Positions 491-21,396 of a stretch of DNA of 21,396 bases are shown here, piece after piece (position 1 is the stretch's first letter; each line of letters begins with the position of its first letter). The DNA lies in contig NW_021823779.1 of NCBI RefSeq assembly GCF_006345805.1, forward strand, positions 1-21,396, written 5' to 3'. The notes beneath the pieces were generated by a model. It searched no databases. It worked only from the letters and a program-made list of their open reading frames with translations, and was not told the origin of the DNA. This DNA comes from Octopus sinensis (taxonomy: Eukaryota). The translations under genes and the position numbers were made by a program.

Positions 491-532
491 TCACATATGG
501 GTTGTATTATGGACATGAAGTGTTAGTGTTTC

Positions 533-537
533 ATGTT

Positions 538-570
<33 letters not shown>

Positions 571-597
571 ATGTGTGTGTATATATGTATATGTATG

Positions 598-642
<45 letters not shown>

Positions 643-645
643 ATG

Positions 646-676
<31 letters not shown>

Positions 677-865
677 GCGTATGTTATATATATATATATA
701 TATATTATGTACGTCTATGTATGTATATATATATATATATATATTATATATACATACATAGACGTACATATATATATATACATACATATATATATATAAT
801 ATATATATATATACATACATATATATCTATATATATAATATATATATATACATACATACATATAC

Positions 866-922
<57 letters not shown>

Positions 923-932
923 ATATATATAC
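533..932. repeat. Compound (TG)n/(TA)n/(TACA)n microsatellite; approximate left boundary of the duplication
   Basis: Directly visible; accounts for the spurious YI/CV-rich ORFs at 457-1053. Confidence 0.95.
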
Positions 933-1296
933 ATAAAATAAAATACGAAATGGGACAAGAATGCAAAACATCCGGACAACTAGGTAATAAAAAAAGGACA
1001 ACAAAACATCCCGAGAGACGATACAAAAAAAACTGACGGGTCATTCGAAACATCTAAATTTCAGTCAAGAACCGGATCATCCTCGCAATCACGGCTGATT
1101 AATCTTGAGAATGCTTCAATCTGGCCAGCCCCCCCCCCAAAAAAAAACTAAGCTATGAAGTTTAGATTCCTTGGAGAAAAGCATCGAATGTATACGCAAC
1201 TGGTACGGAAAAACGGACGATGTTACACCAATATAAATACAAAAATAATACAAAAAAAAAACAGTAACGACATCAACAACAATAATAATAATAATA

Positions 1297-1336
<40 letters not shown>

Positions 1337-1340
1337 TATA
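931..1340. repeat. Probable interspersed repeat remnant ending in an (AAT)n tract (paralogous copy at 12075-12447)
   Basis: A ~350-bp element shared by both copies, flanked by microsatellites. It resembles an octopod repeat I recall; family not assigned. Confidence 0.35.
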
Positions 1341-1700
1341 ACAGGACATAATAACAGGCGTCTTTCGACTGGAGACAAATTGAATTCGTCTGGCGTGTTG
1401 GGAATTAAGCCTTACGGCAGAGGGAAGGGAGTCGCTGTAGCAGTGACCGTGGTCAAACGAAAAAGAGCTAACGGTTAGCGAACGGTCACGTGAGCATAGA
1501 AGAGAGAGAGTAAAAGGAACAAAGGAACCAAAGAGGGAGAGAAGAGAGAGAAAAAATTGGAAGAAAGTTATTAAGGAGGGGAGAAGAGAGAGAGAGCGAG
1601 AGAGAGTGTAGACGGAAGAATCAAGGAGTGGTGAGAAAAAAAGAGATACTGACACAGTGAAGGGCAAAGTAAGAAAGGCAAAGAAATGTGAGAGAGGGGA
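1340..1700. promoter_or_regulatory. Candidate promoter/5'-UTR region: relatively GC-rich block with a TCACGTGA E-box followed by a GA-rich tract
   Basis: GGTCACGTGAGC (CACGTG at 1487-1492; 13351-13356 in copy B) and TGACCGTGGTCA are conserved in both copies. A donor-like AAA|GTAAGA lies near 1668 in both. No transcript evidence. Confidence 0.3.
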
Positions 1701-1803
1701 AAGAGAGTGTGTTGAAGAAGTCGTTCAAAATTTAGTGACCTGTGTACTTACATATAAGAGAACAAAGTGTACGTACGCCACAATACATATATATATATAT
1801 AAT

Positions 1804-1851
<48 letters not shown>

Positions 1852-2556
1852 TGTGTATCATCTTCTCTTTGTGAAAGGGATAAGTAATGGGTTGTGTAAA
1901 ACATATGAACGACTTTGTGGCGATATTTGTCAAAACATGCAGCTACACTTCTCATCGACAAAATCTTACAGCAATTACTCTTTCAAACTGTTGCTGTCAT
2001 CTATCATGAAGATACTCTGCCCGATTGCAATGCCAAGTGCAGGATACGAGATGTGTACTGTCAGCATATTTCGCGGAAGCCTTAAAACATCACAGAAAAT
2101 GCTTTTTGGTATTTATTCAGGCTTCTATATTCTGAGTTCGAATCCCTGCATTTCAACTGTTCTTTCCCTCATTTTTGAGACGATAAAAAAGGTTCCAATA
2201 TTCCCCACCCCCTTTCCGATATTCGTAGAAACTTGAGGTCGTTTAATTAACGTCCAGAAATTATGACAGTTTCTAACACGATTTTTGACCTTAGGTAGCA
2301 ACTGTTATTTGCTCTTTGCTTATCCCTAGAAACTACGCAGAATGAATAATATTTCCTCCAGACATTCATGTCCTTAATAGAAAATGTATCACTTTGAAAG
2401 CATTGATGTCAAGGCACAAAAGCAAAGTGTGAAGATATAAATTTCGATATAGGTGGAAGTGATGTTTTCTAATTACAAATTCAGACAGCTGGACGAAGTG
2501 CACTGCGGGTTAGTAAATATTGCATCTCAAAATATTAATCGAATTGATGATGCTTA

Positions 2557-2676
2557 TACATACACACGTACATACATGCATAAACACATACACACATACA
2601 TACATAGATACATAAATACATACATACATACATACATACATACATACATACACACATACATACATACATACATACA

Positions 2677-2707
<31 letters not shown>

Positions 2708-2776
2708 GTACATACACACATACATACATAGATACATACATACATACATACATACATACATACATACATACATACA

Positions 2777-2807
<31 letters not shown>

Positions 2808-2844
2808 GTACATACACACATAGATACATACATACATACATACA

Positions 2845-2877
<33 letters not shown>

Positions 2878-3048
2878 TCATACATACATACATACACACA
2901 TACATACATAGATACATACATACATACATACATACATATGTACATACACACATACATACATAGATACATACACACATACATACATACATACATACACACA
3001 TACATACATACACACATACATACATAGATACATACATACCTACATACA

Positions 3049-3081
<33 letters not shown>

Positions 3082-3251
3082 TCATACATACATACATACA
3101 CACATACATACATACATACATACGACACACATACATACATACATATGTACATACACACATACATACATAGATACATACACACATACATACATAGATACAT
3201 ACATACATACATACATACATGCATGCATGCATACATACATACATACATACA

Positions 3252-3286
<35 letters not shown>

Positions 3287-3308
3287 GTATTTTTATATGT
3301 ATATATGC

Positions 3309-3348
<40 letters not shown>

Positions 3349-3425
3349 TGTGGATATGTATGTATACACACACACGCGTACGCACACACACATATATATA
3401 TATATATATGTGTGTTTGTGTGTGT
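2557..3425. repeat. (ATAC)n/(TA)n compound microsatellite
   Basis: Directly visible. The paralogous tract at ~14285-14492 is much shorter. Confidence 0.95.
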
Positions 3426-5149
3426 ACCGAAAAAGAGAAAACACAAGGTGTGTACATTCAAGAATAGAAAGAAACGACAGCTTGAGTAAGCAAAGTTTAA
3501 CGGTGGTCAGTGTATAACTAGCATTACACAACCCTCATCAACCACTTTGAACTTTGCACAAGAGAAAGTCTACTGAGCTGTTTGTAAAATACCGTTCGAA
3601 TCTAACTAGTATGTATCATTTAAATTATTCTTTGAGGCTGTATGTGATTAAGTAATAGCATTCGACAGAGTATGTTATGGAAATGATGATGATGGTAGAG
3701 CTTATACCGTTTGTTGCCTGTTTGCATGTGTACAATCCAAGAGAGAGATACCGGAATGATTTACTGATTTTCACTTTACATCTCATCGATTGTATTTGAT
3801 GAAAGGGAATCAGTTGACCCCTTAAGTTTTGGATGAAGTCGGGCTTTTCTAAATAAATTTTTTAATTAACATAAATCGTTTGCTAGGAAACAAGTGAACC
3901 TATTTTGGCTGGATGTTTGTGTTATACGTTTCTTATTATTTTACAAAAGATTTTCCCATTTTCTTACTTTATGTCAAAACATTCTCATCCAACAAACTGC
4001 TGATCTTTGCTACACTGGCCAACTGCTACCCTCTTTTCCATGGAACACTATTTGAACAATTTTGCTATCCGTGGGTTGCTGTTTGTATTGAGTTGATTGA
4101 CCATTATTCTTTGTTTTAAATCGTGTAAATATATTCTGGTTCTGGAGTAGCCTTGTCATAATAGTCAAAACAATGTGTTTTTCATATAGCGTTTTTACTG
4201 GGGGGGGGGGCGTGTGTGTGTCTATGTGTGTCTGTGTGTCTGTGTGTGTCTGTGTGTCATTGTGTCCGTGCGTGAGAGTTCGGTAACAACGCTATATCTA
4301 AAGATGAATGTAGGATGTTGAAGATATTTTTTGACAGTTAGTGAATACTGTCCCGTATTTAGAGCAAAGCCGACATGCATAACCTTCTTCTGATATGAGA
4401 CGTATACCTGGAGTACTTCTTCATCGATTCTTCGCTTAGTTTTTCTTTGCCCAGATTAGTCGTTGACATCCCTCAAAAATAAAAACAATAGTAAGGCCAT
4501 TAATTAAAAGAGATACGTAACATAATGCTCTTCCAGAAAGTATTGTATTTATAAAGATATACATGATAATCATATTTCTATGTGAGGATAACATGACACA
4601 TGTATTCAGCATCAAGCAATTGTATTTAGTTATGTATAGTCGTAGATTGTTAGATATCAGTGCAACAGTTTATACAGTGAAATGTGCTGGAAAGTATTAT
4701 TTGGGTTTAAGAAAACAGTGAAAATACATTTGACTGAGTGCATTTCACATACAACATTCCTTTAACTGCGAACTGACAAACATCTCATAATTATTTTGAT
4801 TGCAGAAATAAAAATAATATAGCTATAGAAGCTAGATATACTTGAAGTAAAAATATTTCATTCACTGTTAACAATATGGGGAATATTTAAGGACAAATGC
4901 TTCGAAGACATCATCGTCGCATAATTTATATATTCACATTTGTAATTAAATCTAGATTAGTTCTATAGATGCAATTAAATTAGTCATATTACTTATTGTT
5001 TAAATTGTACATCTTGGATTTTTAGTGAAATATATTTGAACAGCTCAAAGATAATTGTTACCTAAATTTCAGCTGTAGACTTTTGCTTAATTTCTAAGAA
5101 AAATACTTTTGTATTAATCACTCTCGTTATATGTGTCTATCATCAGGTG

Positions 5150-5213
5150 ATGAAAGGTACCAGCGTCCTATTGTTTTGTGTATTCATTTCATACACCTTC
5201 TCGGATAAACAAG
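5150..5213 (+). CDS. Knottin-like precursor gene A, coding exon 1 (signal peptide MKGTSVLLFCVFISYTFS-DKQ)
   Basis: Acceptor ...tctatcatcag| at 5146, ATG at 5150, donor AAG|GTAAGT at 5214 (phase 1). Basic n-region, hydrophobic core and T-x-S c-region. Frame and splice sites are conserved in copy B. Confidence 0.8.
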
Positions 5214-5493
5214 GTAAGTATAATCAGAAATTTCTTTTATTTTATAGCAATCCGAAATGTAGTGGGAGAAAAGGCGGAAAATAGAAGGGCGGGAAGGAGG
5301 AAAATGAATAACGTTAACTTAACGGTCTTTCGGGTGTACCCCATTTATATGCAATTACAGCTTTTAAATAAATAACTCAATTTAGCAACACTACGCATAG
5401 ACCAAGTATACGGAGTTAAGATTCATTTAATTAACAATATGAATGATACAAATCGGGAAGGATTCTAGTGGTGTGCTCTCATCTCTTACTCCT

Positions 5494-5577
5494 GTATTTG
5501 ATTCAGAACGTAAACACAAACGAAAGGACACTGAACACCTTGCTCGTCCTGCTAACCATTCTGCCAGCTCTCCGCCG
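5494..5577 (-). mobile_element. Decayed 5' head of SINE family B (paralogous copy ~16814-16897)
   Basis: ttcagaacgta...gctaaccattctgccagctc matches the head of the copies at 8525-8743 and 16381-16598. Confidence 0.55.
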
Positions 5578-5958
5578 CCCTTAGAATTCTTAATTATTAA
5601 AATAATTACAGAAGAGATTCAGCAAGTGCTGTATATATAATGTTTCACGTGTCTTTTGTTTGTTTGTTTTTTTTTGTCATTCCTTTTTATTGCTCCTTTG
5701 GGTTTTTTAATCTCCTTTTATGTATAAAAAACATCCATCACTACAGTGATGAGCCATATTTAAGTGTAGGAGTGAGGAACTTCGAGTTCCAGTCTTCCTG
5801 ATCCTGCATCCTGTTTCAAATCGTCTTACCATAAATACGTTTTCCTCTATTCAATGAATTACCTGTTGAGTGATGCATGGGTAATTTGTGTATTTCTACA
5901 CGAAACTTTGGTAAATAGACTTCTAATGCTTTCATATGTATTTTAATATTTCTTTCAG

Positions 5959-6019
5959 ATGTCGCTTCCGTCCATCAACAGAGAGGAGCTTCTGTAGGTT
6001 TAAGTAATATGACTAAAAG
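5959..6019 (+). CDS. Knottin-like precursor gene A, coding exon 2 (propeptide DVASVHQQRGASVGLSNMTK[R])
   Basis: Strong acceptor atttctttcag| and donor AAG|GTAAGA. 61 nt, phase 1 in and phase 2 out, open in frame with exon 1. Conserved in copy B. Confidence 0.8.
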
Positions 6020-6231
6020 GTAAGATCTACATATCTACATATGTTATCGAATTAATAGACAAGCGCCCTCTAGTAAGGTTTCAAAGCTTGTGTCTATAGT
6101 AGTGAGGTCATCAATATTGGCGCAGTTTTTTTCTTCCAACCCATTCCTGATTGTAGTTTTGGTGTAAAAGAGAATATGAAACTGGAATATATCAAGTGAG
6201 ACGATAGGAGAAAATTTTCACGAGTGATATA

Positions 6232-6535
6232 GGCGTAGGAGTGGCTGTGTGGTAAGGAGCTTGCTTACCAAACACATGGTTTCGGGTTCAGTCCCACTGC
6301 ATGGCAACTTGGGCAAGTGTCTCCTACTATAATCTCGGTCGACCAAAGCCTTGTGAGTGGATTTGGTAGACGGAAACTGAAAGAAGCTCGTCGTATATAT
6401 GTATTTATATATATAGGTGTGTGTATAAGTTTGTGTGTCTGTGCTAACCCCTACCCCCAATATCGCATGACAACCGATGCTTGTGTGTTTACGTCCCCAC
6501 AACTCATAGGTTTTGCAAAAGAGACATAATAAATA
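6232..6535 (+). mobile_element. tRNA-derived SINE family A (GGCGTAGGAGTGGCTGTGTGGTAAG... head, B-box-like GGTTCAGTCCC)
   Basis: Several related copies in the window (7813, 8199, 17545, 19481). A/B-box-like head and an internal (TA)/(TG) tract. Confidence 0.85.
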
Positions 6536-6613
6536 ACTACACTTATGCGATAAGCAATGGTCACTATGAGAAAAAAATTAGTTCATAAAAATAGATACTT
6601 TTCACTATCAACA

Positions 6614-6676
6614 CACCACCACCACCACCACCACCATCACCACCACCACCACCATCACCACCACCACCACCATCAC
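6614..6676 (+). repeat. (CAC)n trinucleotide repeat; only a short remnant in copy B (~18160-18185)
   Basis: Directly visible. It produces the poly-His in ORF 6557-6928, which is not considered coding. Confidence 0.9.
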
Positions 6677-7812
6677 AGCAGCAGCATTCTCATTCTCTCT
6701 CTCTCCCTCGTATTCTCTTTTTCTCTCGTTCTTCGCCTCTCCATTCAGCTCACCAATCAACGCATTTGGCTTAACTATATCATTTCTTCCTCTCTTTTTC
6801 TTCACACCTCCCTCTCTCTCTCTCTCCTTCTCAGCCTTACTCCACCTCGCACCCACTCCACCTTCAGCTTTCGAACTAATCTATCTCTATATAAAGCTGA
6901 AGTTGTCTGTGCGTGGCAGGTTTGGTAGCCTTCAACTAACACTATCTCCTCCGAGACCCTGTGGCGCAATTTGACCAAAATTAAGGGTATGATAGAAGAA
7001 GGCTTGCTCTTCCTTCCGTAGAAGAAGAAATTCAAATCGGGCAATGTTAACACCAAAAATTATTTACATCACAAAGGTGCGTTTTTTTCTATGAAAATCC
7101 CTACTTTTTACGATTATTTGACTGCCGTGTCGCCATTTTTCCGTGTATTTCAACCAGAAAAATGTTCACTTAAAGAGGATAAAAAACTACATAATGCAAA
7201 ATTTTTACTTTTCAAAAATTCTAATTCTAAAGGGTCGAAACAAAGCCGAGCAACGCAGAGACATATTGCTAGTTAATATATAATGGGCGAACGAACAAGT
7301 AGATTATCATAGAGATATGTGTTTGCATGTGCGCGTATATTTGCCGTTCTTGGATTGCACAATTTGTGATGTAATGTAACGGTCACTTACACAAACACAA
7401 GAGAGGTTGATCTTCATATTCATATTACTATTTTCTTGGAGAGACAGATAAACCAAAGTAACCAGATTTGAAAATCATATAAAGGTTAAGATTCCCATAT
7501 CAAATGTTATTTTCAAAATGGAGGATTGTTTTGTCTCTTCTTTTGGAAACGTCGTTTTCATATCTCATTTAGGATGCGTAGAGAAGTACATAGGACAAAC
7601 CAACATGACCGTAACAAAAGAAATGATACCACATACAATGCAGGTTTGATTTCCCAGTTGCAGACGAGAAACTCTCGGGTAAAATCTGCTGAGATTCATG
7701 AATCAAAATTTTAACTTATTAATTTATGTCACAACAGTGACGATAAATTCTAACATAGAGGATCTATAAGACTTAGGCTGATTGAAGAATATCGGGGGGG
7801 GTGATTTAAAAG

Positions 7813-8196
7813 TAGACACAGAGGCTGTGTGATAAGTAGCTTTCTTACCACAATTACATGGTTTCGGGTTCAGTCCCATTGCGTGGCAACTTGGGAATTT
7901 GACTCCTACAATAGCCTCGGCCGACAAAAGCCTTGTGAGTGGATTTGGTAGACGGAAACTGAAAGAAGCTCGTCGTATATATGTATTTATATATGTAGGT
8001 GTGTGTATAAGTTTGTGTGTCTGTTTGTCCCATCCTCCAATATCACTTGACAACCGATGATGGTGTGTTTACGTCCCCACAACTTATAGGTTCGGGAAAA
8101 GAGACCGATTGAATAAGTACTTGGCTTACAAAGAATAAGGCCTAGGGTAGATTTGCTCGTCTAATGGCGGTACTCCACAGTCAAATGACAGAAACA
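7813..8196 (+). mobile_element. SINE family A, near full length
   Basis: Same head and body as 6232-6535, plus the 3' part ...cggttcg..aaaagagaccgat..gaataagtact...cagtcaaatgacagaaaca. Confidence 0.85.
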
Positions 8197-8198
8197 TT

Positions 8199-8287
8199 AC
8201 CTTGGGTAATTGTGTTCTACCATAGCCTCGTAATGACCAAAGCTTTGTGAGTGGATTTAGTATACGGAAACAGAAAGAAGCTCGTCG

Positions 8288-8359
<72 letters not shown>

Positions 8360-8481
8360 ATGTATATACTGTCCTCCTAAAATCGCTTGATAACCGATTT
8401 GGGTGTGTTTTCTTCAGCGTAACGTAGCGGTTCGGCAAGAGATAAGATAGAATAAGTACTAGGCAAGTCCTGGTGGCGATT
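8199..8481 (+). mobile_element. SINE family A, 5'-truncated, with internal (TA)n
   Basis: accttggg...atagcctcg...tgtgagtggattt...gaaagaagctcgtcg matches the family A body. Confidence 0.75.
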
Positions 8482-8524
8482 ATTAACAGACATACATCAA
8501 TACCCAACTTCTTACTTCTCTTCT

Positions 8525-8743
8525 AACTATTCATTTCTACTCTAGGTACAAGGCCCGATATGTTGGGTGAGTGGGCCATTCTTTTAGATCGACCCTAGTA
8601 TGCAACTGGTACATAATTTATCAACCCCGAATGGATGAAAGGCAAAGTCGACCTCGGCGGAATTTGAACTCAAAACCTAGTTGCAGACGAAATACCTCTA
8701 AGCATATCGCCCGGCGTGCTAACGATTCTGCCAGCTCACAGCC
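8525..8743 (-). mobile_element. tRNA-derived SINE family B (left arm of an inverted pair)
   Basis: The reverse complement matches 8796-9012 (gagctggcagaa.cgttagcacgccgggcg...gagttcaaattccgccgaggtcgactttgcctttcatcc). Confidence 0.85.
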
Positions 8744-8795
8744 TTTCCCCTCTATCTATTAACACCATTTATTTATTAATTACCCTGACACTAAT

Positions 8796-9012
8796 GCGGT
8801 GAACCGGCAGAAACGTTAGCACGCCGGGCGAGGTGTTAAGCGGTATTTCGTCTGTCTCTACGTTCTGAGTTCAAATTCCGCCGAGGTCGACTTTGCCTTT
8901 CATCCTTTCGGGGTCGATAAATTAAGTACCAGTTATTTACTGGGGTCGATCTATTCGACTTGCCCCACTCCCCCAAAATGTCGGGCCTTGTACCAAGACT
9001 AGAAAAGAATAG
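8796..9012 (+). mobile_element. tRNA-derived SINE family B (right arm of an inverted pair)
   Basis: B-box-like GAGTTCAAATTCC and central gcctttcatcctttcggggtcgataaattaagtacc. Several copies in the window. Confidence 0.88.
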
Positions 9013-9285
9013 CCATATCACTGTCTACATCTACTTATCTACTTATGAAATTCGGAAAATATATATTCATAGACTTGGTCTTTAAAATATACTGGAGAAA
9101 GTACAAATGACAATTTTTGAAAGAACGAAAAAATATGACCCGTCCTATTTGTTTCGGTTCTGCATGCTGTACGTTCACATCCCGTTGGATTTTCTCGACG
9201 TCAATAAAATATAACAGCTTCTTCCCTAACGAGAAAACATAATTTAATGAGTTTCATACTTCACTACAATATTCTGTATTTATAG

Positions 9286-9475
9286 GGTCGCTTGCTCAAT
9301 GGATAATTGTCGCAGATATCTGCCAGTCATTCACTGCTGCCCACATATGGCATGTATTTGCACTTTATCGAGTTGCTGGTGTAGAACACAAAATAAAAGC
9401 CGCGCCACTCATAATAGTATGCTCCAAAGTGTAATCGCTATTCTCGTTTTCCTTGTAAATTTACCAATTTATTGA
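9286..9475 (+). CDS. Knottin-like precursor gene A, coding exon 3: 8-Cys ICK-like domain plus hydrophobic C-terminal tail
   Basis: Acceptor tattctgtatttatag| at 9285. The phase-2 join AG+G gives Arg, completing KR immediately before VACSMDNCRRYLPVIHCCPHMACICTLSSCWCR... Cys spacing is C-x4-C-x8-CC-x4-C-x-C-x4-C-x-C; stop TGA at 9473-9475. Missed by the ORF track because the internal-ATG ORF is only 58 aa. Confidence 0.83.
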
Positions 9476-9604
9476 CGTCCTGCTCTTTTGAATCTTGTGG
9501 ATATATGTCATGGGTCAGATTGTTTGTATAGAAGGAGAAAATCTACTATTTTTCTATTTTGTAATTTAACCAATCGTCAAATCCTATGATAGTAGAAAAC
9601 TATG

Positions 9605-9610
9605 AATAAA
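9605..9610 (+). promoter_or_regulatory. Candidate polyadenylation signal for gene A (another AATAAA at 9851-9856)
   Basis: AATAAA 130 nt after the stop codon. The sequence is AT-rich, so it could be chance. Confidence 0.35.
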
Positions 9611-10121
9611 CATCAAGAGACATAGTGTAATATAAAATATCAACGAGCAGAAGTTTGATTTTGTAATTTATCCTGGAAAGAAATTCACGTATGTTGCACC
9701 AAAAACTGAAATGGTAAAAGAAGAGAAAATCTGCAAACCATAACTTACAACTGTGACTTTTCTTACAAACCTAAATTAATACGACGAACGTATTTAATAT
9801 CTAATATATTTATGTTATTATTCCGTCAAATTTTAATGAAATCTCAATTAAATAAATTTATTAAAGCATTACAAATACTTAGTGCTTCGTTTTTCACTGT
9901 GCTATTTGTTTGTAAGTTACTGAACGGTAACAAAGTCTTTGTGGTTTCTTCTTCGCTGTGGTGTTTGCCTTTAAGTTATCGATATGAATGGTAAGACTTT
10001 ACATTGCAGCGTTATGCTATATTATTGTAAAAACATATATTCTCCGAGTTCTATTTTATAACATTTAAAAAAGAAATGGGAAAAAAATAAGAGATAAGAA
10101 AGGAAAAGAGAGAAAAACAAC

Positions 10122-11848: not shown

Positions 11849-11851
11849 CTA

Positions 11852-11852
<1 letters not shown>

Positions 11853-11897
<45 letters not shown>

Positions 11898-11898
11898 A

Positions 11899-11944
<46 letters not shown>

Positions 11945-11945
11945 A

Positions 11946-11989
<44 letters not shown>

Positions 11990-12075
11990 ATATGTATGTA
12001 TGTAAATATATATGTATGTGTATAAATATATATATATATGTGTATATCATATATATATATATGCATATATATATA
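11853..12075. repeat. (TA)n/(TATG)n microsatellite at the junction before duplication copy B
   Basis: Directly visible. Confidence 0.95.
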
Positions 12076-12447
12076 CATATAAAATACAAATTGGAAAAGA
12101 ATGCAAAACATCCGGACAACTAGGTGATACATAAAGGGACAACAAAACATCCAGATAGACGATACAAAAAAAAAGGTCGGATCATTTGAAGCATTTAATT
12201 TTCAGTCAAGAACCGTATCATCCTCGCAATCTCGGCTGATTAATCTTGAGATTACTTCAATCTGGCCAGCCCCAAGGAAAACTAAGCTATGAGCATTTGA
12301 TTCTTTGGAGATAAGCATCAAATTTATACGAAACAGGTACGGAAAAACGGACGATATTACACGAATATAAATACAAAAATAATACAAAAAACAGTAACGA
12401 TATCAACAACAATAATAATAATGATAATAATAATTATAATAATAATT

Positions 12448-12813
12448 AAAAGTATATGTATTTGGAAAAAGTATATGTATTTCTGAAGGGAGCTAACTTC
12501 TCGTCGACAACCATATTGTCACACGCGATGAAGGTAAACCCTTGAAACTCGGGTCCGTGTGTATCATGAGTTGAAGACGGGAGGATGACTCCCCTTCACA
12601 ATACTGAGAGGACACAGATAGTGTGTCTATAGCCAGCTGGAGGAGATATCTTCCTGGGGCTACAAACTACAGTAGCATCCACCCTTAAGGTTAGCCATAT
12701 TCAAATGGTAAATATGCGTCACGATGTGTTACCGCTACTGTTTATAACTCGCTCTGAGATTTATCATTGTTTAATAATATAATAATAATAATATAATAAT
12801 AATAATATAATAC

Positions 12814-12852
<39 letters not shown>

Positions 12853-13095
12853 AATAATGGATAATAATACTAATACTAATTATAATAATAATAATATTTT
12901 TTTATTTGTTTATTTATTTATTATATTTTTATTTTTTTATTTTGTATTAGACATTCACTAGTACAACACAAAAAACACACAAAAAAAAACAAACAAAAAA
13001 CCCCATTATGGCACAGAACTTCCAACCTGTTGTCTCTTGAGGTCTCTGGTGAGACTTGGAGCCAACTTTTACAGACATAAGCAAAAGTCAAACAG
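12448..13095 (+). mobile_element. Copy-B-specific insert: probably two retroposon 3' ends, each followed by an (AAT)n tail
   Basis: Absent from the paralogous (AAT)n tract at 1281-1340. Two non-repetitive segments (12448-12770 and ~12950-13095) each end in AAT repeats. Confidence 0.45.
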
Positions 13096-13124
13096 AATAA
13101 TAAATAATAATAATATAATATAAT

Positions 13125-13156
<32 letters not shown>

Positions 13157-13606
13157 TAATAATAATATATAATAATAATAATAATAATAATCATCATAAT
13201 AATAACAGGACATTGTAACAGGCGTCATTTGACTGGAGACAAATTGAATTCAGCTGGCGTGTTGAGTATTAAGCCTTACGGCAGAGGGAGGGATGTCGAT
13301 GTGGCAGTGACCGTGGTCAAACAAAAAAGGGCTGACGGTCGGTCAACGGTCACGTGAGCGGAGAAGAGAGAGAAAAAAGAGTAACAAAGGAACCAAAGAG
13401 GGAGAGAAGAGAGAGAGTGTGTGCAGACGGAAGAATCAAGGAGTGGTGAGAAAAAAAGAGAGATAGTGACACGGAGAAGGGTAAAGTAAGAAAGGCAAAG
13501 AAATGTGAGAGAGGGGAGAGGGAGAGTGTTAAAGAAGTCGTTCAAAATTTAGTGACCTGTGTACTTACATATAAGAGAACAAATTGTACGTACGCCACAA
13601 TACATA

Positions 13607-13657
<51 letters not shown>

Positions 13658-13682
13658 ATTATATTATATATATATATATATT

Positions 13683-14122
13683 TAAGTAATACTAAGCAAT
13701 AAAGGGTTTAGCAACGAATTGCCTTACCACATACCGATTTAGAAATAGCAGTCAAAAGTTATAGCTATTTCTTCTACTAAAAAGGAGATCTCAGTAAAAA
13801 CAGCAATTGGAAGGCAGACACAAACAGGTAAGAGAGAATGAATTGACGGCATCTATCATACATTTTAAGTTATCTACGGACGTACGTTTCGAAATCAAGT
13901 TTTTAGGAAAGCATAAGAATTAAATATTAAATAATTCTATCTCACCAAAACTTCTTTTCTCTTCAGCGTAGAATACTATAATCATAAATGATTATATATT
14001 GAATTTTGAGATACTAGAAGGCACCAACTCAACTCAGTATCAGAGCGAGCTAGAATCCGCAACTAGTATCACCAAATCCAATGTGTGAATGAAAAGATTG
14101 TGTCACCAGCCCCTTCCCACCC
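13683..14122. other. Copy-B-specific ~440-bp segment between TA microsatellites, probably an interspersed repeat
   Basis: No counterpart in copy A between ~1790 and 1850. Confidence 0.45.
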
Positions 14123-15283
14123 TATATATATATATATATATATTTATAGTTGTGTGTGTGTGTGCTTATGTTTCTGTGTCATCTTCTATTTGTGAAAAAG
14201 ATAAGTAATGGGTTGTGTAAATTATATGAACGACTTTGTGGCGATATTTGTCAAAACATGTAGCTACACTTCTCATCGACAAAAATACACACATGCATAC
14301 ATACATACGTACATACATACATACATACATACATACATTACATACATACGGACGTACATACTTGCATACATACATATATACATATATATATTTATATATA
14401 TATGTATATGCATGTGGTTGTATGTATGTATACACACACGCGCACGCACACACACAGATATATATATATATATTATATAGATGTGTGTGTGTGTAAAGAA
14501 TAAGTGAAAACACAACGTGTACAACTTCAAGAATAGAAAAGAAAACGACAGCTGGAGCAAAAAAAGTTTAACGGTGGTCAGTGTATAACTGGCACTACAC
14601 AACCCTCATCAACCAGTTTGAACTTTGCACAAGAGAAAGTCTACTGAGCTGTTTGTAAAAATACCGTTCGAATCTAACAAGTATGTAACATTTAAATTAT
14701 TCTTTGCGTCTGTATGTGATTAAGTAATAGCATTCGATAAAGTATGTTATGGCAATAAGGATGGTGGTAGTGGCAGAGCTTAAACCGTTTGTTGCCTGTT
14801 TGCATGTGAACAGTCCAAGATCTGCAAAGAGAGAGGATAACCGGAATGATTTTCTGATTTTCACTTTACATCTCATCGATTGTATTTGATGAAAGGGAAT
14901 CAGTTGAGCCCTTCAGTTTTGGATGAAGTCGAGCTTTTGTAAATTTTATTTTTTGATTAACGTAAATCGTTTGCTAGGAAAAAGTGAACCTATTTGGCTG
15001 GAGGTTGTGTTATTCATTTCTCATTATTACAAAAGATTTTCCCATTTCTTACTTTATGTCAAAACATTCAATCCAAACAAACTGCTGATCTTTGCAACAC
15101 TGGCCAACTGCTTCCCTCTTTTCCATAAAACACTATTTGACCAATTTTGCTATCCGTAGGCTGCTGTTTGTATTAAGTTGATTGACCATTTTTCTTTGTT
15201 TAAAATCGTGTGAATATATTCTGGTTCTGGAGTAGGTTTTTCATAGCAGTCAAAACTATGTGTTTTCATATAGAGTTTTTAGT

Positions 15284-15335
<52 letters not shown>
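15284..15335. repeat. (GT)n microsatellite
   Basis: Directly visible. The paralogous tract at ~4198-4270 is interrupted. Confidence 0.95.
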
Positions 15336-15336
<1 letters not shown>

Positions 15337-16214
15337 TGTGCGTGCGTGTTTGGTAACAATGCTATATCTAAATGATGAATGTAGAATCTTGAAGATATTT
15401 TTTGACAGTTACTGAATACTGTCCCGTATTTAGAGCAAAGCCGACATGCATAACCTTCTTTTGATATGAGACGTATACCTGGGGTACTTCTTCTTCGATT
15501 CTTCGCTTAGTTTTTCCTTGCCCAGATTAGTCGTTGACATACCTCATAAATAAAACAATACTAAGACCATTAATTAAAAGAGACACGTAATATGATGCTC
15601 TTCCAGAAAGTATTGTATTTAAAAAGATAACGATAAACATGTGTCTCTGTGAGGATTATATGACACATTTATTCCGCACCAAACAAATGCATTTAGTCAT
15701 GTATTGTCTCAGATTGTTAGATACCAGTGCAACATTTTATAAGTGAAATGTGCAGGAAAGTTTGATTTGGGTTGAAGAAAACAGAGAAAATACATTTGAC
15801 TGAGTGCATTTCGCATACAAGATTCCACCAACTGCGAACTTACAAACATCTCATAATTGTTTTGATTGCAGAAATAAAAATAATATAGCTATAGAAGCTA
15901 GATATACTTGAAGTAAGAATATTTCATTCACTGTTAGCAATATGGGGAATATTTTGGACAAATGCTTCGAAGACGTCATCTTCTCCTAAATTATATATTC
16001 ACATTTGTAATTAAATCTAGATTAGTACTATTGGTGCAATTAAATTAGCCATATTACTTATTGTTTAAATGGTAAATCTTGGATTTTTAGTGAAATATAT
16101 TTGAACAGCTAAAAGATAATTGTTACCTAAATTTCAGCTGTAGATTTTTGCATATTTCTAAGAAAAATGCTTTTGTATTAATCACTCTCGTTATATGTGT
16201 CTATCATCAGGTGC

Positions 16215-16281
16215 ATGATGAAAGGCAACAGTGTCCTATTGTTTTGTGTATTCATTTCATACACCTTCTCGGATAAACGAG
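16215..16281 (+). CDS. Knottin-like precursor gene B, coding exon 1 (MMKGNSVLLFCVFISYTFS-DKR)
   Basis: Paralogous to 5150-5213. Acceptor at 16210, donor GAG|GTAAGT at 16282, frame intact. Confidence 0.75.
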
Positions 16282-16380
16282 GTAAGTATAATTAGAAATT
16301 TCTATTATTTTATAGCAATCCGAAATGTAGTGGGAGAAAAGGCGGAAAATAGAAGGGCGGGAAGGAGGAAAATGAATATA

Positions 16381-16598
16381 TATTTCTTTACTACCCACAA
16401 GGGGCTAAACTTAGAGGACAGACAAACGGATTAAGTCGATTACATCGACCCCAGTGCGAAACTGGTACTTTTATTTATCGCCCCGAAAGGATGAAAGGCA
16501 AAGTCGACCTCGGCGGAATTTGAACTCAGAACGTAACGACAGACGATATACCGCTAAGCATTCCGCCCGGTACGCTAACGTGTCTGCCAGCTCGCTCT
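16381..16598 (-). mobile_element. SINE family B insertion with a 15-bp target-site duplication (AGGAAAATGAATATA, 16366-16380 and 16599-16613)
   Basis: Perfect 15-bp flanking direct repeats; the empty site is present in copy A at ~5298-5310. Confidence 0.92.
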
Positions 16599-17271
16599 AG
16601 GAAAATGAATATAGTTGCCTTAACGGTGTTTCGGGTGTACCCCATTTATATGCAAATACAGCTTTTAAATAACTAACTCTATTGATCAAAACTACGCATA
16701 GACCAAGTATAGGAAATTAAGATTCTTCTATATAATATATAACATTTAATTAACAACATGAATGATACAAATCGGGAAGGTTTCTAGTGGTGTGCTCTCA
16801 TCTCTTACTCCTGTATTTGATTCAGAACGTAAACACGAACGAAAGGACACTGAATACCTTGCTCGTCGAGCTTACCATTCTGCCAATATTCCGCCACCCT
16901 TAGAATTCTTAATTATTAAAATAATTACAGAAGATATTCAGCAATTGCTGTATATATAATGTTTCACGTGTCTTTTGTTTGTCTTCTTGTCATTCCTTTT
17001 TATTGCTCCTTTAGTTTTTTTTATCTCCTTTTATGTATTAGAAACATACATCACTACAGAGATGAACCATATTTAAGTGTAGGAGTGAGGAACTTCGAGT
17101 TCCAGTCTTCGTGATCCTGCATCTTGTTTCAGATCGTCTTACCATAAATACGTTATCCTCCATTCAATGAATTACCTGTTGGGTGCTTCATGGGTAATTT
17201 GCGTATTTCTACACGAAACTTTGGAAAATAGACTTCTAATGCTTCCATATGTATTTCAATATTTCTTTCAG

Positions 17272-17332
17272 ATGTCGGTTCCATCCGTCAACAGAGAGGA
17301 GCTTCTGTAGGTTTGAGTAATATGACTAAAAG
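17272..17332 (+). CDS. Knottin-like precursor gene B, coding exon 2 (DVGSIRQQRGASVGLSNMTK[R])
   Basis: Paralogous to 5959-6019, with identical splice sites and length (61 nt). Confidence 0.75.
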
Positions 17333-17544
17333 GTAAGATCTTCATATCTACATATGTTATCGAATTACTAGACAAGCGCCCTCTAGTAAGGTTTCATGGC
17401 TTGTGTCTATAGTAGAGCGGTCATCAATATTGGCGATATTCCATTCTTTAGACTCATTCCTGATTGTAGTTTTGGTGTAAAAGAGAATATGAAACGGGAA
17501 TATTTCAAGTGAGACGATAGGAAAAAAATTTCACGAGTAATATA

Positions 17545-17772
17545 GGCGTAGGAGTGACTGTGTGGTAAGGAGCTTACTTACCAAACACATGGTTCCGGGT
17601 TCAGTCCCACTGCGTGGCAACTTGGGCAGGTGTCTCCTACTATAGCCTCGGGCTGACCGAAGCCTTGTGAGTGGATTTGGTAGACGGAAAGGAAAGAAGC
17701 TCGTCGTATATATGTATTTATATATGTAGGTGTGTGTATATGTTTGTTCCACGTCCCAATATCGCTTGACAA
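17545..17772 (+). mobile_element. SINE family A (paralog of 6232-6535) with its 3' part replaced by an unrelated insert
   Basis: Matches family A up to ...atatcgcttgacaa. Confidence 0.85.
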
Positions 17773-19480
17773 TACCAGATGAATGAATTTGGTCGAGGAA
17801 AAGTGAATGGAATTCAATAATATATATCTACTATAGAGACCTGTCCAAATTCCACGGAATTGGAAATAGTAAGAGGACCTGTTTATGAGAGAAAGGAGTA
17901 TTCTTTAAACATTCTTGACGTTTGTCTGCATCCATTTCCTCACGTCATCGACTGCATTATTTTTACCTGTTTCCCCCTCTGATCCGTGCTCCATGTCTGC
18001 TCATTCTTTCTCGAGCAGCTTGTAACTGTATTTCCTGGGAATCCAGAGTTGGCCTTTATAAGCGAGCACATAATAAATATCTACACTTATGCGATAAGCA
18101 ATGGTCACTATGAGAAAAAAAATTAGTTCATAAAAATAGATACTTTTCACTATCAAAACACCTCCACCACAACCCCCACCGTCACAGCAGCTGCGTCTTT
18201 TTCCCTATCTCTCTCTCACACTCTCTCTCTCTCTATCTCTCTTTCTCTCCCTCTCAATCGTGTTCTCTTTTTCTCTCGTTCTTCGCCTCACCCTTCAGCT
18301 CACCAACCAACGCATTTGTCTTAATTATATTAATATTACTCACTTCTCTCTACTTCTTCTTCTCTTTTTCTTCACTCCTCCCTCTCTCTCTTCTCCTCAG
18401 TCTTACTCCACCTCGCACCTACTCCACCTTCAGCTTTCGAACTAATCTATCTCTGTATAAAGCTGAAGTTGTCTGTGCGTGGCAGGTTTGGTAGCCTTCA
18501 ACTAACACTATCTCCTCCGAGACCATTCGGCGCAAGTTGAGCAAAATTGAGAGTATGATAGAAGAAGGCTTGCTCTTCCTTCCGTAGAAGAAAAAATTCA
18601 AATCAGGCTATTTTAACACCAAACATTTTTTACATCACGAAGGTGCTTTTTTCTTCTATGATAATCCCTACTTTTTACGATATTTTGATTGCTGTCTCGC
18701 AAGTTTTCCATGTATTTCAACCAGATAAATGCTCACTTAAAGTTAATAACAAACTACATAATGCAAAATTATTACTTTTCAAAAGTTCTAATTCTAAAGG
18801 GTCGAAACATAGCCGAGCAACGCCGAGCGATACTGCTAGTTAATATATAATGGGCGAACGAACAAGTAGATTATCATAGAGATATGTGCTTGCATGTGCG
18901 CGTATATTTGCCGTTCTTGGATTGCACAGTTTGTGATGTAATGTAGCGGTCACCTACACAAACACAAGAGAGGTTGATCTTCATATTCATATTACTATTT
19001 TCTTCCAGGCTAATTTAGCCAAAACTATATACACAAATGTGACATGGTATACAGCTTCAAGAACTTAAGCATTTACTCATAAACAGACATTAATGTTCAT
19101 TTTAATTGATACAGAGGTAAATAAACCAAAGTAACCAGATTTGAAAATCATATAGAGGCTAAGATTCCCATTTCAAATGTTATTTTCAAGATTGAGGATT
19201 TGTTTTGAGTCTTCTTTTGGAAACGTCGTTTTCATATCTTATTTAGGATGTGTAGAGAAGTACATAGGACAAACCACAATGACCGTAACAAAAGAACTGC
19301 AGGTTTGATTCCCCAGTTGCAGACGAGAAAATCTCGGTTAAATTTTGCTGAGATTCATGAAACAAAATTTTAATTTATTAATTTATGTCAGAATAGTGAC
19401 GATAAATTCTAACATAGAGGATCAATAAGACTTAGGCTGATTAAAGAGTATCGGGGGGGGGGGGGGAGATGGCATTTAAA

Positions 19481-20830: not shown

Positions 20831-20877
20831 TATTAACTGACATACATCAATACTCAACTTATTACCTTCCTTCTAAC

Positions 20878-21093
20878 TATTCTTTTCTACTCTTTGTACA
20901 AGGCCCGAAATGATGGGGGAGTGGGCCAGTCGATTAGATCGACCCCAGGACGCAACTGGTACTTAATTTATCGAACCTGAAATGATGAAAGGCAAAGTCG
21001 ACCTCGGCGGAATTTGAACTCAGAACGTAGCGGCAGACGAAATACCTCTAAGCATATCGCACGGCGTACTAACGATTCTGCCAGCTCACAGCC
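20878..21093 (-). mobile_element. SINE family B, left arm of an inverted pair (paralog of 8525-8743)
   Basis: Colinear with copy A. Confidence 0.85.
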
Positions 21094-21145
21094 TTTCCCT
21101 TATAACTATTAAAACCATTTATTTATTAATTACCCTGTCACTAAG

Positions 21146-21368: not shown

Positions 21369-21396
21369 ACCATATCGCTGTCTACATCTACTCATC

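What the first reader, a model, noticed from the sequence alone, without database searches (positions are those of the whole stretch)
9383..9475. The knottin ends in a GPI-signal-like hydrophobic tail: a possible natural membrane-tethered 'toxin'
Seen: after the last Cys comes a polar linker (RTQNKSRATHNSMLQS, with an N-K-S sequon), then VIAILVFLVNLPIY and the stop, with no cytoplasmic tail. Established: small residues, a ~10-aa spacer and a terminal hydrophobic stretch form the GPI-attachment signal pattern. Natural tethered prototoxins such as lynx1 use the three-finger fold, and the tethered ICK toxins I know of are engineered tools. Inference: this could be an endogenous cell-surface ICK modulator of channels or receptors rather than a free venom peptide. 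Alternatively, cleavage at the linker Arg could release a soluble form.
Basis: partly seen in the sequence, partly recalled or inferred. Interest (0 to 1): 0.82.

Follow-up and report, generated by a model that had tools for sequence, protein, structure and literature searches.

The report
Octopus knottin-like peptide with hydrophobic tail
The stretch is the real end of an unannotated three-exon octopus gene for a small secreted cysteine-knot-like peptide, and its greasy 14-residue tail is kept in every known paralogue, so a membrane-tethered form is plausible but a GPI anchor is not shown.

Summary
Window 9383-9475 encodes RTQNKSRATHNSMLQS + VIAILVFLVNLPIY + stop. It is the end of exon 3 of a 104-aa, three-exon prepropeptide (5150-5213, 5959-6019, 9286-9475).

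The gene belongs to an uncharacterised Octopus bimaculoides family (LOC128250513/514/516/517/536/541) with no Pfam domain. It has the same exon structure as the RefSeq model for LOC128250516. The window protein itself is in no database searched.

All 10 family copies examined keep the linker and hydrophobic tail in frame. Eight of them have exactly 30 residues after the last Cys. The Cys-rich core is hypervariable; its predicted structure (pLDDT 81.5) resembles spider and cone-snail ICK peptides, but not significantly.

The GPI reading is only partly supported:
- The window copy fits the pattern (S80-R-A82, 8-residue spacer, 14 hydrophobic residues).
- Paralogues lack a canonical omega site.
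- Only 5 residues separate the knot from omega.
- Tail conservation matches that of the adjacent non-coding DNA (pN/pS 0.74).
- Two annotated isoforms of one paralogue splice out exactly at the linker/tail junction, and the window keeps the matching acceptor.

Most likely this is a membrane-association signal, probably GPI-type, possibly switchable by splicing. No predictor and no RNA data could be used.

The parts
5150..5213 (+). Exon 1 coding part: signal peptide MKGTSVLLFCVFISYTFS plus DKQ; donor CAAG|GTAAGT, phase 1
   Evidence: It is 90% identical to exon 1 of LOC128250516. It has the same 64-nt length as the RefSeq model. AlphaFold predicts a helix at residues 4-18.
5959..6019 (+). Exon 2: propeptide DVASVHQQRGASVGLSNMTK(R). 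It ends in the K-R dibasic site once joined to the first base of exon 3
   Evidence: The 61-nt length matches the RefSeq model. The KR site is conserved in 7 of 8 family proteins.
9286..9382 (+). Exon 3, first part: the 8-Cys knottin-like domain (R)VACSMDNCRRYLPVIHCCPHMACICTLSSCWC, framework C-x4-C-x8-CC-x4-C-x-C-x4-C-x-C
   Evidence: All 8 Cys are invariant in the family. AlphaFold pLDDT is 81.5. The top Foldseek hits are ICK peptides.
9383..9430 (+). Polar linker RTQNKSRATHNSMLQS. It holds the N78-K-S80 sequon and the candidate omega site S80-R81-A82
   Evidence: The length is conserved, but the sequence is only 70% identical among copies and pN/pS is 1.23.
9431..9472 (+). Hydrophobic tail VIAILVFLVNLPIY (14 aa, mean Kyte-Doolittle 2.55; the last 19 aa average 1.91)
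   Evidence: It is kept in frame in all copies. Mean nucleotide identity among copies is 86%.
9473..9475 (+). Stop codon TGA, at the same position in 8 of the 9 genomic exon-3 copies
9428..9436 (+). Candidate alternative 5' splice site AGT|GTAATC at 9430|9431, exactly at the linker/tail boundary. It is weak, lacking G at -1 and at +5
   Evidence: The homologous site ACT|GTAAGC is used in RefSeq isoforms X1 and X2 of LOC128250541.
9998..10030 (+). Conserved acceptor tttacattgcag| (ends at 10009) plus a hypothetical 4th-exon coding part, CGT TAT GCT ATA TTA TTG TAA = RYAILL*
   Evidence: The acceptor is conserved in 6 copies. L001 and L004 would read CHTILL*. Use of this exon in the window gene is not shown.
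9605..9610 (+). AATAAA, a possible poly(A) signal for the tail-encoding (3-exon) transcript. A second one lies at 9851-9856 in a block conserved among paralogues
   Evidence: The AATAAA count in the window is no more than chance.
16218..16281 (+). Exon 1 of a second, tandem gene copy (MKGNSVLLFCVFISYTFSDKR)
17272..17332 (+). Exon 2 of the second copy (DVGSIRQQRGASVGLSNMTK). Its exon 3 lies beyond the window end

Best explanation
Window 9383-9475 is the C-terminal 30 codons plus stop of an intact, unannotated member of an octopus-restricted, tandemly duplicated gene family.

The family encodes small prepropeptides with four parts: a signal peptide, a propeptide ending in K-R, a hypervariable 8-Cys knottin-like domain, and a constant-length extension of 16 polar and 14 hydrophobic residues.

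The extension most likely works as a C-terminal membrane-association signal read in the ER. The best guess is a GPI-attachment-type signal. In this copy that means cleavage and lipid transfer at S80, leaving a 38-residue knottin on the outer leaflet. A marginally hydrophobic uncleaved anchor is the fallback.

A weak 5' splice site at the linker/tail junction and a conserved downstream acceptor could yield a tail-less soluble isoform (...NSMLQS-RYAILL).

Shown: the gene model, family membership, presence of the tail in every copy, and the fit of this copy to the GPI pattern. Inferred: actual lipid anchoring, the omega site, use of the splice switch, tissue and target.
For: Gene and family:
- Exhaustive phmmer and profile searches find only O. 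bimaculoides LOC128250513/514/516/517/536/541 (E 1e-25 to 1e-53).
- The exon structure is identical to the RefSeq model.

Tail kept:
- 10 of 10 copies are in frame, and 8 of 10 have exactly 30 aa after the last Cys.
- No K/R/D/E occurs in the 14-residue tail of the 8 non-frameshifted genomic copies.
- In a simple star-tree neutral simulation, P = 0.06 for no stop and no charge, and P = 0.006 for hydrophobicity as high as observed.

Fit of this copy to the GPI pattern:
- Pattern from PMC10491789: omega small, omega+1 not Pro, omega+2 small, 8-12 residue spacer, hydrophobic end.
- This copy has S80/R81/A82, THNSMLQS (8 residues), then 14 hydrophobic residues with nothing after them.
- The last-19 Kyte-Doolittle average is 1.39-2.36 across copies, i.e. 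marginal to moderate.
- AlphaFold predicts a helix at residues 80-99.
- An N-terminal signal peptide and a K-R propeptide site place the protein in the secretory pathway.

Splice switch:
- P0009 and P0010 (LOC128250541 X2 and X1) end ...NAILQT|CHIMVS... through a donor at the tail boundary.
- The acceptor tttacattgcag| is conserved in the window and in 5 other copies.
Against: - No GPI, TM or signal-peptide predictor could be run.
- The hydrophobic run is 14 residues, with N and P inside it, against 15-20 in the quoted pattern.
- Only RTQNK (5 aa) separates the knot from S80, against about 10.
- Paralogues have no small omega / small omega+2 pair at the equivalent position or at a canonical distance. 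The only recurrent candidates touch the last cysteine.
- Tail substitutions show no third-position bias (6/7/5) and pN/pS is 0.74.
- The first 40 nt after the stop are 80% identical among copies, against 86% for the tail. The conservation may therefore be nucleotide-level (gene conversion, or mutation focused on the mature region) rather than selection on the peptide.
- The window donor GTAATC is weak, and guessed spliced isoforms of other loci are not annotated.
- No expression data were available.
Confidence: 0.42

Rival explanations
1. The tail is an evolutionary by-product. It would be the translated start of a former or alternative intron 3 and 3'UTR, whose nucleotide sequence is kept by gene conversion or low mutation. 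It has no selected function at protein level. The functional product is the soluble knottin, made from the spliced isoform or after unspecific trimming.
For: - The donor used in LOC128250541 X1/X2 sits exactly at the first tail codon, and the acceptor is conserved in 6 copies.
- Nucleotide identity is 0.86 in the tail, against 0.80 and 0.72 in the next 80 nt and 0.69 in the intron end.
- Variable sites fall 6/7/5 across codon positions, and pN/pS is 0.74.
- Second-position-T codons stay hydrophobic under most mutations.
Against: - Every copy keeps the frame and the stop position, and none gained a stop or a charge in the 14 codons (P about 0.06).
- One copy (L002 26913) has CT instead of GT at the donor and still keeps the tail ORF.
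- Most donors are weak (GTAATC).
- RefSeq models of five loci end with the tail.
- Predicted spliced isoforms of 513, 516 and 517 are not annotated.
Confidence: 0.25
2. The tail stays on the mature secreted peptide as a membrane-partitioning or self-association module. It would bring the knottin to target membranes, as in membrane-active C-terminal extensions of some spider ICK toxins, or in the hydrophobic domain of mollusc big defensins (here in the reverse order).
For: - There is no conserved omega site and no conserved basic cleavage site in the linker.
- Hydrophobic character is conserved and a helix is predicted.
- The hypervariable core with conserved flanks is typical of offensive or defensive peptides.
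Against: - The tail is uncharged and not amphipathic.
- A 14-residue purely hydrophobic end on a 62-residue peptide with an N-terminal signal would more probably be handled in the ER as an anchor or GPI signal, or cause retention.
- No proteomic evidence exists.
Confidence: 0.15
3. The linker and tail form a C-terminal propeptide, acting as a folding or sorting aid, that an endoprotease removes to release a soluble knottin.
For: The precursor is clearly processed at its N-terminal side at K-R. The window linker contains R75 and R81.
Against: The linker arginines are not conserved. Most paralogues have S/N at position 75 and H at 81, and no basic pair anywhere in the linker.
Confidence: 0.1
4. 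The window copy is an unexpressed recent duplicate (a nascent pseudogene), so its tail has no consequence.
For: The exact protein is absent from all collections and from the RefSeq annotation. It lies in a repeat-rich tandem duplication.
Against: The ORF is intact and all splice sites are canonical. The 8 Cys, the K-R site and the stop position are all preserved.
Confidence: 0.08

Closest known systems
Octopus bimaculoides uncharacterised proteins LOC128250516 (XP_052831637.1), LOC128250541, LOC128250514, LOC128250513, LOC128250517 and LOC128250536
   Same: Homologous, with 43-59% amino-acid identity and profile E-values down to 4e-53. They share the three-exon structure, signal peptide, K-R propeptide, 8-Cys framework, 30-residue C-terminal extension and hydrophobic end. 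They are tandem clusters on one chromosome.
   Different: The window protein is not identical to any of them, and the inter-cysteine loops are almost unrelated. The S80-R-A82 candidate omega site is unique to the window copy.
Spider 8-cysteine ICK toxins (U4-agatoxin-Ao1a 2n6n, mu- and omega-agatoxins, delta-palutoxins; Pfam Toxin_35 and Toxin_9)
   Same: They share the cysteine framework C-C-CC-C-x-C-C-x-C and a predicted C-terminal beta-hairpin. The best Foldseek match is 2n6n (TM 0.63/0.66, rmsd 2.6 A, 35% identity over 34 columns). Eight of the 9 best PDB sequence hits are such toxins.
   Different: No hit is statistically significant (E 0.7-5), and Pfam hits are below threshold and come from single members only. 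The host is a mollusc. The gene has introns separating signal, propeptide and mature parts. The uncharged hydrophobic C-terminal extension is absent from those toxins. The resemblance is probably convergent, or too short to prove homology.
Cone-snail O-superfamily (ICK) conotoxin genes
   Same: They are molluscan and have a three-exon layout of signal, propeptide and mature peptide. Signal and flanks are conserved around a hypervariable mature region, and synonymous divergence is also raised in the mature part (conotoxin gene behaviour is from established knowledge). The muO-conotoxins MrVIB and MfVIA are among the Foldseek hits.
   Different: This family has eight rather than six cysteines. 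There is no sequence similarity to conotoxin signal sequences, since no search found any. Conotoxins have no hydrophobic tail.
lynx1 / Ly6-uPAR 'prototoxins' (GPI-tethered three-finger modulators)
   Same: The concept is the same: an endogenous toxin-like disulfide-rich domain made with an N-terminal signal and a C-terminal hydrophobic GPI-type signal (established knowledge).
   Different: The fold differs (three-finger LU domain against knottin), and no UPAR_LY6 Pfam hit was found. GPI anchoring is experimentally shown for lynx1 and not for this family.
Agouti-signalling protein and AgRP C-terminal domains (endogenous vertebrate ICK ligands)
   Same: They are non-venom knottin-like ligands. 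ASIP (2kza) is the top Foldseek hit of the full-length model and fourth for the domain model.
   Different: They are soluble, have no hydrophobic tail and a different cysteine count. The hit is not significant (E 1.4-2.9).
Alternative 3' processing that switches anchored and soluble forms (acetylcholinesterase H/T forms, NCAM-120, IgM membrane/secreted)
   Same: The architecture is similar. A donor at the start of the anchoring segment competes with read-through and polyadenylation, so one gene could make tethered and soluble products (the comparators are from established knowledge).
   Different: Here the switch is annotated in only one paralogue. The window donor is weak and its use is untested.

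Membership tests
Octopus LOC1282505xx cysteine-rich prepropeptide family (uncharacterised) | Significant full-length sequence similarity | tested here: met
   phmmer E = 2.3e-8 with exon 3 alone. The full protein gives E = 9.7e-28, and the profile gives up to 3.7e-53.
Octopus LOC1282505xx cysteine-rich prepropeptide family (uncharacterised) | Same exon-intron structure (64-nt signal exon, 61-nt propeptide exon, terminal exon holding the Cys domain and tail) | tested here: met
   The window exons match the brute-force reconstruction of XP_052831637.1 on L001.
GPI-anchored protein (C-terminal GPI-attachment signal) | N-terminal ER signal peptide | tested here: met
   MKGTSVLLFCVFISYTFS is nearly invariant in the family and is predicted as a helix at residues 4-18. 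This is heuristic only, since no SignalP was available.
GPI-anchored protein (C-terminal GPI-attachment signal) | Small omega residue, omega+1 not Pro, small omega+2 | tested here: inconclusive
   The window has S80-R81-A82 (and N78-K-S80). Paralogues have no small/small pair at that distance, only C-S-S or C-N-S at the last knot cysteine. The pattern is from PMC10491789.
GPI-anchored protein (C-terminal GPI-attachment signal) | Hydrophilic spacer of 8-12 residues after omega+2 | tested here: met
   THNSMLQS, 8 residues.
GPI-anchored protein (C-terminal GPI-attachment signal) | Terminal stretch of 15-20 hydrophobic residues, with nothing after it | tested here: inconclusive
   There are 14 residues (VIAILVFLVNLPIY) with N and P inside, mean KD 2.55. 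The protein ends there. This is one residue short of the quoted range.
GPI-anchored protein (C-terminal GPI-attachment signal) | About 10 unstructured polar residues before omega | tested here: not met
   Only RTQNK (5 residues) lies between the last disulfide-bonded Cys (C74) and S80.
GPI-anchored protein (C-terminal GPI-attachment signal) | Positive call by a trained predictor; PI-PLC release or detergent-phase partitioning | not testable with these tools
   NetGPI, PredGPI and big-PI are not installed and there is no network. This needs bench work.
Inhibitor cystine knot (knottin) peptides | At least 6 Cys in a C-C-CC-C-C framework within about 30-40 residues | tested here: met
   The framework is C45-x4-C50-x8-C59C60-x4-C65-x-C67-x4-C72-x-C74, and all of these Cys are invariant in 8 family proteins.
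Inhibitor cystine knot (knottin) peptides | Knottin three-dimensional fold | tested here: inconclusive
   The domain model has pLDDT 81.5 and a hairpin at 22-25/30-33. Twelve of 15 Foldseek hits are knottins, the best being 2n6n at TM 0.63/0.66, but all have E >= 0.7.
Inhibitor cystine knot (knottin) peptides | Knotted disulfide connectivity I-IV, II-V, III-VI | not testable with these tools
This needs NMR or MS disulfide mapping.
Inhibitor cystine knot (knottin) peptides | Significant match to a curated ICK toxin family (Pfam Toxin_35, Toxin_9 and similar) | tested here: not met
   The window protein has no hit. Single paralogues hit Toxin_35 at E = 0.0065 and Toxin_9 at E = 0.049, both weak and confined to one member each.
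Ly6/uPAR three-finger prototoxins (lynx1-like) | LU domain (8-10 Cys three-finger fold) | tested here: not met
   There is no UPAR_LY6 hit in Pfam, and the structural hits are knottins.

The most novel reading that the evidence does not exclude
Octopuses carry a lineage-specific, rapidly diversifying family of natural membrane-tethered knottins. These would be an ICK-scaffold counterpart of the three-finger lynx1 prototoxins. Their anchoring segment could be skipped through a splice donor at its first codon, so each gene could deliver either a cell-surface or a diffusible modulator.
Probability: 0.18. Interest if true: 0.85.

Novelty: new variant of a known kind. Interest (0 to 1): 0.6.

Why it matters
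Tethered ICK toxins are known, as far as I am aware, only as engineered tools, and my searches found no natural one. Natural tethered 'prototoxins' use the three-finger fold.

If this family is lipid-anchored, it would be the first natural knottin of that kind. It would also be a cephalopod-specific gene expansion, so it could bear on octopus neural, sensory, immune or venom biology, and it would supply a set of ready-made tethered scaffolds.

Even if the tail proves to be only a soluble-form by-product, the locus still documents three things:
- an undescribed octopus knottin-like peptide family;
- conotoxin-style hypervariability focused on the mature region;
- a possible switch between anchored and soluble forms by alternative 3' processing.

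Tried and rejected
- The word-indexed protein search with exon 3 alone found nothing. The exact-sequence contig look-up of the 58-aa ORF found nothing.
- Pfam on exon 3 gave only a chance DUF6526 hit at E = 0.16.
- My first brute-force search for an upstream exon assumed a two-exon gene and picked a wrong donor, 5217. The homologues corrected this.
- A spider origin, suggested by the agatoxin-like CC...CxC...CxC motif, was rejected once the homologues proved to be Octopus bimaculoides proteins.
- Hit P0002, a 1672-aa repeat protein, matches only residues 30-57 in five repeated stretches. I treated it as spurious.
- P0003, P0001 and P0009 could not be located on contigs, because only the longest isoform is on record.
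- No locus fetched is identical to the window (81-88% identity in non-coding DNA), so the source species and position remain undetermined.
- Guessed tail-less isoforms of LOC128250516, 513, 517 and of the window gene are not in the collection.
- Literature searches found no paper on this family and none on a natural GPI-anchored knottin. The queries were knottin + cephalopod, ICK + octopus, GPI-anchored + knottin, and the LOC numbers.
- The full-precursor AlphaFold model was too poor (pLDDT 56.6) for fold assignment.
- There are no tRNAs in the window. AATAAA is not enriched.
- ORFs at the window start have no Pfam domain.

Full report
**1. What is in the sequence**

Translating 9245-9478 on the + strand gives an open frame of 74 codons. 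It ends ...CWC-RTQNKSRATHNSMLQS-VIAILVFLVNLPIY-stop. Position 9383 is the first base of the Arg that follows the last Cys, and 9473-9475 is TGA.

The window is AT-rich eukaryotic DNA full of microsatellites and SINE-like repeats. No tRNA genes were found.

**2. Is it a gene?**

Exon 3 alone found nothing in the word-indexed protein search and nothing in Pfam. The exhaustive phmmer search over 1.84 billion representatives found two real relatives, P0001 and P0003 (E = 2e-8 and 9e-5). Both are 'uncharacterized proteins' of Octopus bimaculoides (LOC128250541 and LOC128250536).

Their N-terminal parts located the missing exons in the window:
- Exon 1 is 5150-5213 (MKGTSVLLFCVFISYTFSDKQ, donor CAAG|GTAAGT).
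- Exon 2 is 5959-6019 (acceptor tttcag|, donor AAAG|GTAAGA).
- Exon 3 is 9286-9475 (acceptor tatttatag|).

The exon lengths (64 nt, 61 nt, terminal exon) and phases equal those that reconstruct RefSeq XP_052831637.1 on its own locus.

Searches with the full protein and with a family profile add LOC128250516, 514, 513 and 517. All lie on chromosome CM046622.1, in two clusters near 29.2 and 36.4 Mb. None has a Pfam domain.

The window protein itself is in no collection. No fetched locus is identical to the window; non-coding identity is 81-88%. The window gene is therefore an unannotated paralogue, or an orthologue from a related octopus.

The window also holds a second tandem unit: 710-9039 matches 11850-21396 at about 88%. 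It has its own intact exons 1 and 2. Its exon 3 falls just past the window end.

**3. Anatomy of the product**

The family alignment shows:
- a nearly invariant signal peptide;
- a propeptide ending in K-R in 7 of 8 members;
- eight invariant cysteines (C-x4-C-x8-CC-x4-C-x-C-x4-C-x-C in the window) separated by almost unrelated loops;
- a constant-length C-terminal extension.

Evidence on the fold of the core:
- A profile of the family against PDB sequences returns spider 8-Cys ICK toxins as eight of its nine best hits, all at E = 1-5.
- Single paralogues touch Pfam Toxin_35 and Toxin_9 weakly.
- AlphaFold on the 34-residue core gives pLDDT 81.5 with the expected terminal beta-hairpin.
- Twelve of its 15 Foldseek hits are knottins. 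The best is U4-agatoxin-Ao1a (TM 0.63/0.66, 35% identity), followed by muO-conotoxins and ASIP. Every E-value is at or above 0.7.

'Knottin-like' is thus a reasonable structural reading. It is not proven membership, and homology to arthropod toxins is not shown.

**4. Is the tail conserved?**

A regex scan of the window and the five O. bimaculoides loci finds nine genomic exon-3 copies. All are open through a hydrophobic end. With isoform X3 of LOC128250541, that makes ten copies.

Eight have exactly 30 residues after the last Cys and end ...VNLP-x-Y/C. Two share a 1-nt frameshift four codons from the end and read on into LIDVLFL, which is still hydrophobic.

What that conservation means is less clear. 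Mean pairwise nucleotide identity among the copies:

| Region | Identity |
|---|---|
| Cys-rich part | 0.49 |
| Linker | 0.70 |
| Tail | 0.86 |
| 3' flank, nt 1-40 | 0.80 |
| 3' flank, nt 41-80 | 0.72 |
| Intron end | 0.69 |

Variable sites in the tail fall 6/7/5 over the three codon positions.

Nei-Gojobori sums over pairs:

| Region | pN/pS | pS |
|---|---|---|
| Tail | 0.74 | 0.15 |
| Linker | 1.23 | 0.20 |
| Core | 0.86 | 0.52 |

Everything except the core is conserved, as in conotoxin genes. The tail is only slightly more conserved than adjacent non-coding DNA.

A crude star-tree simulation gives P = 0.06 for no copy acquiring a stop or a charged residue, and P = 0.006 for hydrophobicity staying as high as observed. 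Shared ancestry makes these values optimistic. My reading is modest evidence that hydrophobic character is maintained, and no evidence for constraint on particular residues.

**5. Is it a GPI signal?**

The pattern quoted in PMC10491789 has these parts:
- about 10 unstructured residues before omega;
- a small omega residue;
- any omega+1 except Pro;
- a small omega+2;
- an 8-12 residue hydrophilic spacer;
- 15-20 hydrophobic residues.

The window protein offers S80-R81-A82, then THNSMLQS (8 residues), then 14 hydrophobic residues to the end. That is a near-textbook fit, except that the tail is one residue short and only five residues separate the knot from S80.

In the paralogues the equivalent triplets are I-H-G, I-H-V, I-Y-G and similar. 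No small/small pair lies at a canonical distance, and the only recurrent candidates abut the last cysteine.

The last 19 residues average 1.39-2.36 on the Kyte-Doolittle scale across copies, and 1.91 in the window. That is marginal to moderate hydrophobicity. From established knowledge (Galian et al. 2012, listed as reference 39), marginal hydrophobicity is what efficient GPI signals show. AlphaFold draws a helix at residues 80-99 at low confidence.

No trained predictor could be run. I put GPI anchoring of this copy at roughly one in three, and some form of membrane association at roughly one in two.

**6. The splice alternative**

The paralogues point elsewhere.

RefSeq isoforms X1 and X2 of LOC128250541 (P0010, P0009) end ...NAILQT-CHIMVSIKKTVMAELAVDDRRYG. 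On the genome the same exon reads on as ...NAILQT-VSAFLVFLVNF... These isoforms use a donor ACT|GTAAGC exactly at the first tail codon, and a fourth exon about 580 nt downstream.

The window has AGT|GTAATC at 9430|9431. Most copies have GTAATC, which is weak because it lacks G at +5. One copy has CT instead of GT.

The acceptor tttacattgcag| is conserved in the window (it ends at 10009) and in five other copies. Spliced, the window protein would end ...NSMLQS-RYAILL*. L001 and L004 would end CHTILL*.

Such isoforms are not annotated for the other loci. Two AATAAA motifs (9605 and 9851) lie between donor and acceptor, although AATAAA is not enriched in the window.

One gene could thus make a tail-bearing product (read-through plus early polyadenylation) and a tail-less product (splicing). 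The same data also feed the rival view that the tail is merely translated intron.

**7.

Release by cleavage 'at the linker Arg' is not a family feature, because R75 and R81 are not conserved. The conserved processing site is the K-R before the knot. The statement that natural tethered prototoxins use the three-finger fold stands as established knowledge. My literature searches found no natural GPI-anchored knottin and no paper on this family.

**8. Verdict**

- The feature is a real, conserved C-terminal hydrophobic extension of an undescribed octopus knottin-like prepropeptide family.
- A GPI-type or other membrane-anchoring role is the best single explanation (about 0.4). It is not established, and a by-product or alternative-splicing explanation remains serious (about 0.25).
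- Novelty: a new variant of a known kind.
- Interest: 0.6, rising to about 0.85 if tethering, and especially a tethered/soluble splice switch, were shown.

Noticed in passing
window 710-9039 and 11850-21396: These are two copies (about 88% identical) of an 11-12 kb tandem unit. The second carries its own intact exon 1 (16218-16281) and exon 2 (17272-17332) of a sister gene, whose knottin exon should lie about 250 nt beyond the window end.
   Followed up: partly
window 8527-9012 (intron 2); also 16434-16593 and 20877-21322: A 486-nt inverted repeat, with inner arms of 173 nt at 84% complementarity, is built from two head-to-head SINE-like copies about 270 nt upstream of the knottin exon. The same element recurs in the second unit and in the O. 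bimaculoides loci.
   Followed up: partly
window 6240-6525, 7820-8105, 17558-17747: A second SINE-like repeat family (83-90% identity between copies), each copy followed by TA/TG microsatellite.
   Followed up: no
window 520-930, 2500-3480, 19600-20740: Long compound microsatellites (TG, TA and CATA-type) translate into spurious Cys-rich ORFs (CMYVCMYV...). They could mislead a by-eye search for cysteine-rich peptides.
   Followed up: yes
L002 21932-22123, 22899-23090, 26913-27104: LOC128250514 of O. bimaculoides has three intact knottin-plus-tail exon-3 copies behind one exon 1. LOC128250541 isoforms also use different exon 3s. This may be an array of alternative terminal exons, so that one signal/propeptide unit feeds several knottins.
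   Followed up: partly
window 9293-9382 versus 9383-9472, and the paralogous copies: Synonymous divergence is 2.5-3.5 times higher in the Cys-rich part (pS 0.52) than in the linker and tail (0.15-0.20). This is conotoxin-like hypervariability focused on the mature region, gene conversion of the flanks, or partly alignment noise.
   Followed up: partly
window 6002-6010 (N38-M-T40 in the propeptide): An N-x-T glycosylation sequon in the propeptide is kept in most paralogues (SNMT, NNMT, SNVT).
   Followed up: no
window 2-522, minus strand: Two overlapping ORFs of 94 and 108 aa have ordinary amino-acid composition but no Pfam match. They may be a decayed retroelement fragment.
   Followed up: partly
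window 5135-5149 and 16182-16217: The reading frame stays open upstream of the start ATG (..VYHQV-MKG..). This is the same region that RefSeq uses to give LOC128250541 and LOC128250536 isoforms N-terminally extended, non-signal starts. Those longer isoforms may be annotation artefacts.
   Followed up: no
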